From assembly GCF_006345805.1 (NCBI RefSeq), contig NC_043024.1, forward strand, positions 7,688,001 to 7,752,000: DNA of 64,000 nucleotides, given 5' to 3'. Positions 55,801 to 58,800 of the stretch are shown piece after piece. Positions within the stretch are counted from its first letter, which is position 1. Each line of letters starts with the position of its first letter. Below the pieces are notes generated by a model. The model saw only the letters and a list, made by a program, of their open reading frames with translations. It ran no database searches and had not been told where the DNA came from. The position numbers and the translations under genes were made by a program. This DNA is from Octopus sinensis. Its lineage: Eukaryota.

Positions 55801-58800
55801 TATACGCAAGGGTGCTGAAAAGTTCCCTGCTTTGGATAAAAAGAAAATACAGTTAATGGGCTCCAGGTGGGGAACCTATATGCCAAGGAAACCGGGAACC
55901 GGCCCTTATGAGCCAGGCATGGCTCGAGAAGGAACAAACAAACAACTAACCCCTCTCCTTTCTCCATTCCCTTCCATACTCCTCAGCCCCTCTGATCTTT
56001 CTATCCTTTGTTCCTCACTAACCCCTCTGTAGAGGCACATGGCCTAGTGGTTAGAGCAGCGGACTTGCGGTCGAAGGATTGCAGGTTCGAATCTTAGACT
56101 GGGCAATGTGTGTGTTTGTGAGCGAAACACCTAAGCTCAATATGGCTCCGGTAGAAGGTAATGGCGAAACTTCTGCTGACTCCTTCGCCACAACTTGCAG
56201 CTCAACTGCGATGAACCAGCATCCCATCTGGGTGGGGAACCTATATGCCAAGGAAACCGGGAAACCGGCCCTATGAGCCAGGCATGGCTTGAGAAGGAAC
56301 AAACAAACAACTAACCCCTCTCCTTTCTCCATTCCCTTCCATACTCCTCAGCCCCTCTGATCTTTCTATCCTTTGTCCCTCCACCTCAGATCATCACCCT
56401 CTCCCTTTTCTGTTGTCCCTCAGTTATAGGGCCTTAGCCTTGCAAGTTAAGAAGCAATCATCTCTGCTGCTGGTGCCTCATAAAAAATACCTAATCATCA
56501 TCATCATCCTTTAACGTTCGCTTTCCATGCTAGCATGGGTTGGACGATTTGACTGAGGACTGGCGTTTAGGAGCGGCACTTCTTCACACATATCTCCTCA
56601 TCCATCAGTAGTACATGACCATGCCAACGCAAACGTCTCTCCTGATCTCGCCACATCCGATGCTTCTTATGTCCAACATTTCTGTTGTGCGTGCACACTG
56701 ACATTACACATCCAGCGGATCATGCTAGCTTCATTTCTTTCGAGCCTACGCATGTCCTCTGCAGTCACAGCCCATGTTTCACTGCCGTTTTGGATAAAAA
56801 GAAAATGCATTTAATTATGATTTTATTCAACATATTAACCAAAAAGATAGCTTTCGTGTGCGGCAGATGCACAGGGGCAATAGACACCACAGATAGTCAG
56901 AAAACAGATTCCATCACACTCCAGGGGAAGAAACTAGTAGTTGATAGCTTCCGCAACCTAGGTGATCAAGTTAGTAGTGGGGGTGGATGCTCAGAGAGTG
57001 TTACCACTAGAATAAGAATAGCCTGGGCAAATTTAGAAAGCTTCTTCCTCTGCGGGCGACAAAGGGTCTCTCGCTCAGAGTGAAAGGTAGATTGCACGAC
57101 GCTTGTGTGCGAACTGCCATGCTTCACGGCAGTGAAACATGGGTCGCGACTGCGGAGGACATGCGTAGGCTCGATAGATATGAAGCTAGCATGATCCGCT
57201 GGATGTGTAATGTCAATGTACATGCACAACAGAAATGTTGGACATAAGAAGCATCGGATGTGGCAAGATCAGGAGAGACGTTTGCGTTGGCATGGTCATG
57301 TACTACTGATGGATGAGGAGATATGTGTGAAGAAGTGCCGCTCCTAAACGCCAGTCCTCAGTCAAATCGTCCAACCCATGCTAGCATGGAAAGCGAACGT
57401 TAAAAGATGATGATGATGATTAGGTATTTTTTATCAGGCACCAGCAGCAGAGATGATTGCTTCTTAACTTGCAAGGCTAAGGCCCTATAACTGAGGGAGA
57501 GGGTGATGATCTGAGGTGGAGGGACAAAGGATAGAAAGATCAGAGGGGCTGAGGAGTATGGAAGGGAATGGAGAAAGGAGAAGGGTTAGTTGTTTGTTTG
57601 TTCCTTCTCGAGCCATGCCTGGCTGATAAGGGCCGGTTTCCCGGTTTCCTTGGCATATAGGTTCCCCACCCGGATGGGATGCTGGTTCGTCGTAGGTGAG
57701 CTGCAAGTTGTGGCGAAAGAGTCAGCAGAAGTTCGCCATTACCTTTTACCGGAGCCACATTGAGCTTAGGTGTTTCGCTCATAAACACACACATTGCCCG
57801 GTCTAAGATTCGAACCCGCAATCCTTCGACCGCAAGTCCGCTGCTCTAACCACTAGGCCATGTGCCTCCACAGAGGGGTTAGTGATAGGATTAGAAAATG
57901 GCGACAGAGTTGAAATGGTGATAGGTGGTTTGTGCAAGAGGGGAGGGTTTAGGGCTATTCAACATGAGAAGGAGTGAATATTAATAGGTGTGAGGAGAAA
58001 GGGGACAGGGGGAAAGCAATAGACTAGGGAGGAGAGGAACTGAATTGAGTCATTAACCCTTTTGTTACCAACCTGGCTGAAACCGCCTCTGGCTCTGTAG
58101 TACAAATGTCTTGTTTTCATAAGTTCTGAATTAAAATCTTCCACCAAACCTTAGTCACAATTTATGTTCCTAACACTAGCTGACTGATAACTAAATTCTT
58201 TGTTATATCTAAAGTAATTGAAACAAACCCAGAGCATCTCAACAGAAATATGGTAACAAAAGGGTTAACAAATGATTAATTTAACCCTTTTGATACCAAC
58301 CCGACTGAAACTGGCCCTGGCTCTGTAGTACAAATGTCTTGTTTTCATAAGTTTCGAATTAAAATCTTCCACCAAACCTTAGTCACAATTAATGTTCCTA
58401 ACACTAGCTTAATGATAACTAAGTTATTTTACTAAATTCTTTGTTATATTTAAAGTAATTGAAAGAAACACCAAACATCTCAGCAGAAATATGGTAACAA
58501 AAGGGTTAATAAATGATTAATTTAATCCTTTCGTTACCAACCTGACTGAAACTAGCTCTAGCCTTGTAGTACAAATGTCTTGCTTTCATACAAATGTTTT
58601 CTTTTCATAAAATCTTCCAAATTCTTTGTTATATTTAAAGTAATTAAAAGAAACACAGAGCTTCTCAAAATAAATACAGTAACGAAAGGTTTAAAAGAAA
58701 GGTGTGAGGGTGCAGAGGGGGAAAGATGAAAAGGAGCGTTGGGGCTTTAAAGGAGTAGAGAAGCTGAAACAGGGTAAGGCTATGAAAGAGGAGGCACAGG

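What the first reader, a model, noticed from the sequence alone, without database searches (positions are those of the whole stretch)
56015..57885. ~770-bp inverted duplication of mixed sequence 260 nt from the Walker A exon
Each arm contains SINE D, unique-looking DNA, a family C tail and an RTE RT piece in the same order, so this is one segmental inversion-duplication rather than two insertions. The RTE frame continues into the spacer only on the right, so the left arm is probably the derived one. The XPB pre-mRNA could fold a ~760-bp duplex, a strong ADAR or Dicer substrate near a catalytic exon.
Basis: partly seen in the sequence, partly recalled or inferred. Interest (0 to 1): 0.7.

Follow-up and report, generated by a model that had tools for sequence, protein, structure and literature searches.

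The report
Backward-copied repeat block in XPB intron
In an octopus-like genome, a 0.93-kb block of dead transposon pieces was copied backwards into the same intron of the DNA-repair helicase gene XPB, making a hairpin-forming inverted repeat of a kind that is very common in such genomes, and nothing here shows that it has a function.

Summary
The left arm (56015-56788) and right arm (57126-57885) are reverse complements: 775 aligned columns, 94.6% identity (96.6% without gaps), with a 337-nt spacer. They lie 259 nt upstream of the Walker-A exon of XPB/ERCC3, which is on the minus strand.

The arms share transposon junctions and the same stop codons and frameshifts, so this is one segmental copy, not two insertions. 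The left arm is the derived copy. A 931-nt insert (55858-56788) consists of GGGC, a second copy of 155 nt of the SINE, and the arm. It is flanked by a 27-nt direct repeat (25/27) found nowhere else in the window. The three 155-nt copies form a star tree, which points to a single event.

I favour local DNA template switching. A reverse-transcriptase route is not excluded.

The minus-strand pre-mRNA is predicted to fold into about 744 arm-to-arm base pairs. However, the exon takes no part in this pairing, the arms have decayed neutrally, and the window holds 69 other inverted pairs of at least 100 nt within 5 kb. Octopus is already known for abundant long dsRNA and hyper-editing.

Verdict: real, well resolved and ordinary. 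No independent assembly or RNA data could be reached.

The parts
55653..55756 (-). XPB/ERCC3 exon encoding Walker A ([35 protein letters not shown]). AG acceptor at 55758-55757, GT donor at 55652-55651.
   Evidence: Translation. tblastn with an XPB probe. Pfam ResIII and ERCC3_RAD25_C on the spliced exons.
59140..59246 (-). Preceding XPB exon ([36 protein letters not shown]). The intron 59139-55757 (3383 nt) contains the whole structure.
   Evidence: acag|TATT acceptor, TGCG|gtaagt donor.
55831..55857 (.). Left copy of the 27-nt direct repeat TTTGGATAAAAAGAAAATACAGTTAAT, a target-site-duplication-like flank of the derived insert.
   Evidence: Only two copies in the window; 0 expected in shuffles.
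55858..55861 (.). 4-nt filler GGGC at the left junction, with no template identified.
   Evidence: Three-way alignment.
55862..56016 (+). Extra 155-nt copy of the 3' half of the SINE, equal to the reverse complement of 57519-57674. This is the first templated segment of the insert.
   Evidence: 97% to both other copies. Star-like relation, 3/3/2 private changes.
56015..56788 (+). Left (derived) arm. 56015-56028 is shared non-SINE flank. About 56029-56400 is the tRNA-like SINE (+). About 56401-56493 is sequence single-copy in the window, including the 14-nt left-only indel 56402-56415. About 56494-56565 is (ATC)n plus the LINE 3' tail, antisense. 56566-56788 is the reverse-transcriptase C-terminal remnant, antisense.
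56789..56815 (.). Right copy of the 27-nt direct repeat (TTTGGATAAAAAGAAAATGCATTTAAT; 25/27 identical to the left copy).
56816..56834 (.). 19 nt of pre-existing intron between the direct repeat and the 5' end of the truncated LINE.
56835..57421 (+). 5'-truncated, frameshifted non-LTR (RTE-like) LINE copy ending in (GAT)n. 56835-57125 lies in the spacer, 57126-57421 in the right arm.
   Evidence: tblastn with Octopus bimaculoides relatives P0121-P0127. Frames. Tail family.
57126..57885 (+). Right (source) arm. 57126-57421 is the LINE 3' part (+). 57422-57499 is single-copy sequence. About 57500-57871 is the SINE (-). 57872-57885 is the shared non-SINE flank.

Best explanation
This is a real, few-million-year-old local inverted duplication inside the 3.4-kb intron that precedes the Walker-A exon of XPB.

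Starting state. The intron already held a dead, 5'-truncated RTE-like LINE (56835-57421). About 80 nt of unique DNA followed it, then a tRNA-like SINE in the opposite orientation.

The event. In one event, a strand being synthesised at the AT-rich site just left of the LINE left its template and copied the opposite strand of the nearby DNA twice. It copied 57674 down to 57519 first, then 57885 down to 57126. It then returned 27 nt behind the point of departure. The product is TSD - GGGC - 155 nt - 774-nt arm - TSD. I infer that the copying was DNA-templated: replication or repair template switching of the FoSTeS/MMBIR or 'four-point' type.

Consequence. The XPB pre-mRNA can fold a hairpin of about 744 bp with a 337-nt loop. 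In an octopus this would most likely be hyper-edited by ADAR like thousands of other intronic inverted repeats, and removed with the intron, with no specific effect on the exon.

What is shown and what is inferred. Shown: the anatomy, the direction of copying, the single-event origin, the neutral decay and the predicted fold. Inferred: the enzyme that did the copying, and the fate of the RNA.

My sub-confidences: real 0.93; single event with the left arm derived 0.85; DNA-templated given that 0.6-0.65; no specific function 0.85.
For: - Segmental copy. The arms share the junctions of unrelated elements and the same stops and frameshifts.
- Left arm derived. LINE homology runs on into the spacer only on the right. 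A 27-nt direct repeat, unique in the window, flanks 55858-56788.
- Single event. The three copies of the 155-nt segment carry 3, 3 and 2 private changes and no shared derived ones.
- Real and aged. There are 26 substitutions, 21 of them transitions, 10 at CpG and balanced in direction. There is also a 14-nt indel, and the flanking repeat itself has 2 changes.
- Local DNA templating. The template lies 311-1060 nt from the insertion site. There are two template segments, with 0-2 nt of microhomology at the junctions (TC at 56015-56016, T at 56788). Neither end of the insert is a LINE tail or an A-rich tail, and the (GAT)n tail is about 300 nt inside the insert. At 27 nt the repeat is longer than the 7-15 bp usual for RTE target duplications (PMC6007223).
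- Age. A Jukes-Cantor distance of 0.035 between the arms, against the octopus repeat calibration of about 0.0036 per My (PMC13282606), gives roughly 3-5 My.
- Fold.
- Ordinariness.
Against: - No reads or second assembly could be reached, so reality rests on internal evidence alone.
- The insertion site is only 19 nt from the 5' end of the LINE copy, in AT-rich DNA. That would be natural for an endonuclease hot spot and hints at LINE machinery.
- A clean flanking duplication plus an inner end that looks like a 5' truncation is also what target-primed reverse transcription leaves. One SINE-like copy in the window has a 16-nt duplication.
- Microhomology of 0-2 nt is weak support for MMBIR.
- Known short-range template switches are much shorter (median 12 nt, maximum 128 nt in apes; PMC7954356).
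- Mismatches are unevenly spread along the arms. A simple one-event-then-neutral-decay history does not predict this.
Confidence: 0.55

Rival explanations
1. Reverse-transcriptase route. A LINE endonuclease made staggered nicks 27 nt apart at the AT-rich site. Reverse transcriptase then copied an RNA covering the right unit, either nascent XPB pre-mRNA or an antisense read-through transcript, with one template jump. This is a twin-priming or 3'-transduction-like event that left a 5'-truncated, TSD-flanked inverted copy.
For: - The 27-nt flanking duplication.
- The inner end falls at an arbitrary point inside the RT remnant, like a 5' truncation.
- The insertion is 19 nt from the 5' end of an earlier LINE insertion in AT-rich DNA, as expected of a reused endonuclease target.
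- A 4-nt filler and a two-segment structure are typical of reverse-transcriptase template jumps.
- Active RTE and other LINE families are reported in octopus (PMC13282606 and PMC9115989).
Against: - Neither end of the insert is the LINE's (GAT)n tail or an A-rich tract. The cognate tail lies about 300 nt inside the insert.
- RTE target duplications are mostly 7-15 bp (PMC6007223).
- The source LINE copy is a dead 0.6-kb fragment, so cis-preference cannot apply.
- A retrocopy landing 340 nt from its source in a genome of gigabase size is very unlikely unless nascent RNA is used in cis, which is undocumented for inverted copies.
- There is no directional A-to-G excess that copying of an edited RNA might leave.
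Confidence: 0.25
2. Two independent insertions, head to head, of a composite dispersed repeat (LINE 3' end + flank + SINE) that is amplified elsewhere in the genome.
For: LINE 3' transduction can in principle spread such composites. The arms differ by 3.4%, as two copies of a young family might.
Against: - No other copy of the SINE subfamily, of the roughly 80-nt linker or of the junctions exists in 64 kb.
- The arms share 14 nt beyond the SINE 5' end and the same decay lesions.
- Only the left block has a flanking duplication, and it also includes a rearranged extra 155-nt piece that dates to the same time.
- The right block continues without a break into more of the same LINE.
Confidence: 0.03
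3. Assembly artefact: a chimeric fold-back read, or a collapsed heterozygous inversion, produced a false inverted duplication.
For: No reads could be examined. Long-read chimeras are a known source of false palindromes (general knowledge).
Against: - The arms differ by 26 substitutions, biased to transitions and CpG, plus a 14-nt indel. This is not an error-like homopolymer pattern.
- There is a 337-nt unique spacer.
- There is a 27-nt flanking duplication that carries 2 substitutions, and an extra rearranged segment.
- The structure is internal to the sequence, 45 kb from the only gap.
- The 3.4% divergence is too high for alleles.
Confidence: 0.05
4. Functional hairpin. The duplex is kept because it acts in cis on XPB, as an ADAR 'editing inducer' or splicing modulator for the Walker-A exon, or because it is diced into siRNAs against the RTE-like and SINE families. 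This is not exclusive of the origin models above.
For: - A very stable predicted duplex 259 nt from the exon.
- An intronic duplex 150 nt from an exon is required for site-selective editing of mammalian Gabra-3 (PMC3479170).
- The central roughly 300 columns of the arms have only 2 mismatches (scan permutation P about 0.006).
Against: - The exon shows no better-than-chance pairing with either intron, so there is no exon hairpin or editing complementary sequence to be induced.
- Substitutions give G-U in the pre-mRNA strand no more often than in the antisense strand, 11 against 10.
- The structure is only a few My old.
- Similar hairpins are frequent in this gene and genome-wide.
- The low-divergence centre is poorer in CpG and could reflect arm-to-arm gene conversion.
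Confidence: 0.06

Closest known systems
Intronic inverted repeat pairs that form ADAR-edited dsRNA (human IRAlus; hyper-edited inverted repeats across Metazoa, strongest in octopus; PMC5625713)
   Same: Two nearly identical, oppositely oriented repeat-derived segments lie less than 2 kb apart in one pre-mRNA and are predicted to form a long, almost perfect duplex.
   Different: The arms are not two independent insertions of one repeat family. They are a single segmental copy of a mosaic (SINE + linker + LINE end), so the duplex (about 744 bp) is longer than a single element. Editing itself was not observed here.
Replication/repair template switching: the 'four-point' short-range template-switch model (PMC7954356), FoSTeS/MMBIR, and fold-back inverted duplications (PMC3907307)
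   Same: A reverse-complement copy of nearby sequence is inserted, with more than one switch, little or no microhomology, a return close to the departure point, and spontaneous creation of a hairpin-capable inverted repeat.
   Different: The copied tracts (155 and 774 nt) far exceed the ape events (median 12, maximum 128 nt). They are far smaller than the human fold-back duplications of kilobases to megabases. The return point is 27 nt behind the departure point, which mimics a target-site duplication.
LINE target-primed reverse transcription with twin priming or 3' transduction (L1 paradigm; RTE insertion signature, PMC6007223)
   Same: A flanking direct repeat, an inner end like a 5' truncation, an inverted segment next to a LINE 5' end, and an AT-rich target.
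   Different: The insert does not end in the LINE tail. The inverted segment duplicates the 3' part and non-LINE flank rather than carrying a more 5' part of the element. The duplication flanks only the inverted block and is longer than usual for RTE.
Editing inducer element of Gabra-3 (PMC3479170) and hairpin-RNA endo-siRNA loci of Drosophila (from general knowledge)
   Same: A long intronic or non-coding duplex lies a few hundred nt from an exon, and the hairpin is made from inverted duplication of local sequence.
   Different: Those elements are conserved and have measured outputs. This one is young, is decaying neutrally, and has no exon hairpin beside it.

Membership tests
Local template-switch inverted duplication (four-point / FoSTeS-MMBIR type) | The inserted sequence is the reverse complement of sequence nearby on the same molecule. 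| tested here: met
   55862-56016 = rc(57519-57674) and 56015-56788 = rc(57126-57885). The template lies 311-1060 nt away.
Local template-switch inverted duplication (four-point / FoSTeS-MMBIR type) | Microhomology at the switch points. | tested here: inconclusive
   0 nt plus a GGGC filler at 55858, 2 nt (TC) at 56015-56016, and 1 nt (T) at 56788. This is compatible with the model but not diagnostic.
Local template-switch inverted duplication (four-point / FoSTeS-MMBIR type) | An ancestral 'empty' state exists in relatives or other haplotypes. | not testable with these tools
   No cephalopod genome or reads could be reached. XPB of this species is absent from the protein collection, and three exact-ORF look-ups found nothing.
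LINE (RTE-type) retroposition by target-primed reverse transcription | Target-site duplication flanking the insert. | tested here: met
   A 27-nt direct repeat, 25/27 identical and unique in the window. It is longer than the 7-15 bp typical of RTE (PMC6007223).
LINE (RTE-type) retroposition by target-primed reverse transcription | The insert ends with the element's 3' tail (microsatellite or poly-A) next to one duplication copy. | tested here: not met
   The insert ends read ...TTAAT|GGGCTCCAGG and ...CACTGCCGT|TTTGG. The (GAT)n tail is internal, at 56494-56508.
L1-style twin priming | The inverted 5' segment and the direct 3' segment are different, adjacent parts of one element, and both lie inside a single duplication. 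| tested here: not met
   The inverted block duplicates the same 3' part plus non-LINE DNA. The direct repeat flanks only the inverted block.
Foldback or long-TIR DNA transposon | A duplication flanks the whole inverted repeat, the arms are element-specific, and there are multiple genomic copies. | tested here: not met
   The outer flanks (before 56015, after 57885) show no direct repeat and no homology. The arms are a mosaic of unrelated retroelements. There is no other copy in the window.
RTE clade of non-LTR retrotransposons (for the LINE piece) | A short 3' UTR ending in a microsatellite-like repeat, and a 3' tail shared with partner SINEs. | tested here: met
   A roughly 70-nt tail plus (GAT)n is shared with at least 13 SINE-like copies. 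The feature is as described in PMC6007223.
RTE clade of non-LTR retrotransposons (for the LINE piece) | Phylogenetic placement of the RT/APE domains within the RTE clade. | not tested
   Only the RT C-terminal remnant is present. It has no Pfam hit. The nearest proteins are unnamed Octopus bimaculoides fragments at 65-78% identity.
tRNA-derived SINE (for 'SINE D') | A tRNA-like head with A and B boxes. | tested here: inconclusive
   The motifs TGGCCTAGTGGTTAGAGC and GGTTCGAATCT are visible, and the head is conserved in 5 copies. However, ARAGORN and Rfam report no tRNA.
ADAR-edited intronic inverted-repeat dsRNA | Inverted, highly similar segments within one transcription unit that can pair. 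| tested here: met
   Both arms lie in intron 59139-55757 of XPB. Predicted 744 bp, with helices up to 211 bp.
ADAR-edited intronic inverted-repeat dsRNA | Clustered A-to-G mismatches in RNA reads. | not testable with these tools
   No RNA-seq access.
Editing inducer element / hpRNA locus | A neighbouring exon hairpin or ECS, or small RNAs from the arms; conservation of pairing. | tested here: not met
   The best exon-intron duplex is -72.5 kcal/mol against -69.9 +/- 3.8 for shuffled exons. G-U against A-C outcomes are 11 against 10. Small RNAs are not testable.

The most novel reading that the evidence does not exclude
The hairpin, born only a few million years ago, is already used. Either it recruits ADAR, or slows splicing, at the neighbouring Walker-A exon of XPB and so tunes this helicase in a heavily editing animal, or it is diced into siRNAs against the RTE-like LINE and its SINEs. 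The unusually clean central ~300 bp would then be maintained, not accidental. A related mechanistic novelty is also not excluded: the copy may have been made by LINE reverse transcriptase from nascent XPB pre-mRNA in cis, which would be a new way of creating hairpins.
Probability: 0.06. Interest if true: 0.6.

Novelty: new member of a known kind. Interest (0 to 1): 0.2.

Why it matters
In itself it matters little. It is one more intronic inverted repeat in a genome where such repeats and the hyper-editing they attract are documented as exceptionally common.

Its value is as a clean, datable example. All three junctions, the filler, the flanking duplication and the source are preserved, so it shows how a long hairpin can arise de novo by backward copying of neighbouring DNA rather than by two transposon insertions.

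If population or sister-species data show the empty site, the locus would give a natural with/without comparison for asking whether a roughly 750-bp duplex 259 nt from an exon changes editing or splicing of an essential helicase gene.

Tried and rejected
- Identifying the species and fetching the orthologous or independently assembled locus. A protein search with 208 aa of spliced XPB gave only fragments at 82% identity or less. Three exact-ORF look-ups across the arm boundaries found nothing. Only the RT remnant pointed to Octopus.
- Rfam and ARAGORN on the SINE heads: no hits.
- Pfam on the RT remnant: no family. Relatives gave only sub-threshold chance matches, which I ignored.
- Homology between the right outer flank (57886-58060) and the extra 155-nt segment, which would have extended the arms: score 20 against a shuffle mean of 19.4, rejected.
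- An ADAR footprint in the DNA, meaning a retro-copy of edited RNA: substitution directions are balanced, rejected.
- An exon-complementary sequence in the introns: not above chance.
- A survey of target duplications of tail-bearing SINE-like copies, to calibrate what this LINE's machinery leaves. Only one clean case emerged (16 nt, near 19227), plus one ambiguous case of 217-223 nt inside a tandem-repeat region. That is too few to decide.
- Literature on XPB/ERCC3 editing in cephalopods: no paper in the library.
- The first folding script timed out and was re-run.
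Full report
**1. Observation**

The repeat finder reports collinear inverted blocks covering 56015-56788 and 57126-57885. blastn joins them into one alignment of 775 columns at 94.6% identity, E = 0. A global alignment gives 26 mismatches in 759 ungapped columns (96.6%), a 14-nt indel present only on the left (56402-56415), and two single-base indels. The spacer is 56789-57125, 337 nt. The only assembly gap in the window is at 10650-10749.

**2. Genomic setting**

A probe for the XPB/ERCC3 helicase region finds a full series of exons on the minus strand, from 59221 down to 16764. The spliced translation hits Pfam ResIII and ERCC3_RAD25_C.

- The Walker-A exon is 55756-55653 (GAGKT).
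- The preceding exon is 59246-59140, with good splice sites.
- The whole structure therefore lies in the 3383-nt intron 59139-55757.
- The left arm begins 259 nt upstream of the exon in transcript terms. The derived insert described below begins 102 nt upstream.

The reverse-transcriptase (RT) remnant's nearest relatives are uncharacterised Octopus bimaculoides proteins at 65-78% identity. The window is therefore from an octopus or a close relative. XPB of that species is not in the protein collection.

**3. What the arms are made of**

Read in left-arm orientation, each arm contains:

- 14 nt (TCACTAACCCCTCT) that are not part of the SINE. Three diverged SINE copies in the window begin only at GTGGAGGCAC.
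- A SINE of about 370 nt with a tRNA-like head. A- and B-box-like motifs are visible, although ARAGORN and Rfam do not call a tRNA.
- About 80 nt with no other copy in the window.
- A roughly 70-nt 3' tail ending in (GAT)n. At least 13 SINE-like copies in the window share it, which is the classic LINE-SINE tail relationship and the microsatellite ending typical of RTE-type LINEs (PMC6007223).
- The C-terminal coding remnant of a non-LTR RT, in antisense.

Both arms have the identical flank after the (GAT)n tail (TTAGGTATTTTTTAT...) and the same in-frame stops and frameshifts. Independent insertions cannot produce shared junctions between unrelated elements or shared decay lesions.

**4. Direction and anatomy of the event**

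Homology to the LINE protein runs from 57211 back to about 56835, into the spacer, on the right only. On the left it stops at 56788.

Two further features were not in the finding.

- First, a 27-nt direct repeat, TTTGGATAAAAAGAAAATRCAKTTAAT, sits at 55831-55857 and 56789-56815 (25/27 identical). It occurs nowhere else in the window even with three mismatches allowed, and 0 are expected by chance. It flanks a 931-nt insert, 55858-56788.
- Second, that insert is not just the arm. It reads GGGC, then 155 nt (55862-56016) that are a second copy of the SINE's 3' half (the reverse complement of 57519-57674), then the 774-nt arm.

The three copies of the 155-nt piece differ by 3, 3 and 2 private changes and share no derived state. 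This star tree means the extra piece arose at the same time as the arm.

The junctions show 0 nt of microhomology (plus the filler), 2 nt (TC) and 1 nt (T). The right outer flank has no homology to the extra piece.

The ancestral intron therefore read ...27-mer | TATGATTTTATTCAACATA | LINE fragment - linker - SINE(-)... A single event then inserted two reverse-complement tracts copied from 311-1060 nt away.

**5. Is it an artefact?**

I could not reach reads or another assembly. The internal evidence is strong, however.

- 21 of the 26 differences are transitions, and 10 lie in CpG context.
- The four transition directions are balanced (5, 5, 6, 5).
- There is a 14-nt indel bounded by a short direct repeat.
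- The flanking 27-mer has itself acquired two changes.

Fold-back chimeras give near-perfect arms with no spacer. Alleles would not differ by 3.4%.

The Jukes-Cantor distance between the arms is 0.035. Using the octopus repeat calibration in PMC13282606 (0.065 is about 18 My and 0.2 is about 56 My), the event is roughly 3-5 My old. That is younger than the O. vulgaris / O. bimaculoides split quoted there (13-33 My).

**6. Mechanism**

I favour DNA-level template switching. A nascent strand leaves its template at the AT-rich site, copies the opposite strand nearby in two tracts, and returns 27 nt behind its departure point. This is the logic of the 'four-point' model and of FoSTeS/MMBIR (PMC7954356; PMC3907307).

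In favour:
- The extreme proximity of the template.
- Two switches.
- Insert ends that are not element ends. The LINE's own (GAT)n tail is buried about 300 nt inside the insert.
- A dead 0.6-kb source LINE.
- A flanking repeat longer than the 7-15 bp usual for RTE.

Against:
- Weak microhomology.
- Tract lengths far above those of the ape events (maximum 128 nt).
- The insertion site is only 19 nt from the LINE's 5' end in AT-rich DNA. Together with the clean duplication and the truncation-like inner end, this is what LINE endonuclease and RT would leave.

I therefore keep an RT-mediated copy of local RNA at about 0.25. A small survey of target duplications of tail-bearing elements in the window gave one clean 16-nt case and one ambiguous 217-223-nt case in a tandem-repeat region, too few to decide.

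**7. Consequence for the RNA**

The minus-strand transcript 57900-55850 has a predicted MFE of -1651 kcal/mol, against -628 to -638 for three shuffles. The fold has 744 arm-to-arm pairs and uninterrupted helices of 211, 115, 85 and 59 bp. The extra 155-nt copy does not compete for pairing.

Nothing singles it out functionally:

- The exon's best duplex with either intron (-72.5 and -68.7 kcal/mol) is within the range of shuffled exons (-69.9 +/- 3.8). There is no editing complementary sequence and no exon hairpin for a nearby duplex to 'induce', unlike Gabra-3 (PMC3479170).
- Transitions leave G-U in the pre-mRNA strand 11 times and in the antisense strand 10 times.
- The window contains 425 inverted matches. 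Of these, 69 are at least 100 nt long and within 5 kb of each other. One is a 669-nt pair at 90.7% identity with a 339-nt spacer, ending 53 nt from another XPB exon.
- Porath et al. found more than a million hyper-editing sites in octopus and an exceptionally high density of long, near-perfect dsRNA formed by neighbouring inverted repeats (PMC5625713).

This hairpin is the longest and cleanest in the window, but it belongs to a known and abundant class.

**8. One loose end**

Mismatches are unevenly spread: 14 in 56015-56318, 2 in 56319-56648, and 10 in 56649-56788. A scanning permutation test gives P of about 0.006 for a 300-column window. Lower CpG density in the middle explains part of this. 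Arm-to-arm gene conversion is a plausible cause of the rest. Selection on the duplex is possible but unsupported.

**9. Verdict**

The structural interpretation is confirmed and sharpened: the left arm is derived, the origin is a single event, and the event left a 27-nt flanking duplication, an extra templated segment and a filler. The functional speculation is untested and there is no positive sign for it here. This is a new example of a known kind. Interest is low (0.2), mainly as a well-preserved case of hairpin birth by backward copying.

Noticed in passing
window 56015-56788 (arm alignment): Arm-to-arm mismatches are clustered: 14, 2 and 10 in the left, middle (56319-56648) and right thirds. 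The scan-permutation P is about 0.006. This may reflect arm-to-arm gene conversion or a mutation-rate effect (the middle is CpG-poorer).
   Followed up: partly
window 43256-54687: A 152-bp satellite of about 75 units at 97-98% identity, strongly GC-skewed, fills 11.4 kb of the XPB intron downstream of the Walker-A exon.
   Followed up: no
window 31864-32739 and 32967-33609: Two oppositely oriented arrays of a 171-174-bp tandem repeat form a 669-nt inverted pair (90.7%) with a 339-nt spacer. It ends 53 nt from XPB exon 33662-33733. The same repeat family also occurs at 1091, 7417, 14983 and 41004.
   Followed up: partly
window 55316-55514 and 59972-60166: An inverted pair of SINE copies (88.5% over 200 nt) brackets the two exons 59246-59140 and 55756-55653. 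This geometry is associated elsewhere with back-splicing or exon skipping.
   Followed up: no
window 36384-36373 (minus strand): XPB helicase motif II reads DEVQ instead of the usual DEVH (codon CAG). 10 of the 97 fetched XPB homologues in which the motif was found also have DEVQ, including the two best hits, so it is a natural variant.
   Followed up: yes
window 17025-18107: A roughly 640-nt SINE-like element with the (GAT)n tail (17242-17884) is flanked by direct repeats of 217-223 nt (93.7%). This is either a very long target duplication or an insertion into a tandem-repeat region.
   Followed up: partly
window 58053-58700: Tandem or dispersed repeats with a period of about 230-240 nt lie immediately right of the right arm. 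Related short matches occur at 13808-14360 and 63092.
   Followed up: no
proteins P0121, P0122, P0127 (relatives of the LINE remnant); window 56835-56870: The octopus relatives carry a Cys/His-rich, PHD-like stretch just upstream of the region matched here (PHD-finger E = 1.6e-4, below the Pfam cut-off). The window copy starts inside it (...IAFVCGRC...).
   Followed up: no
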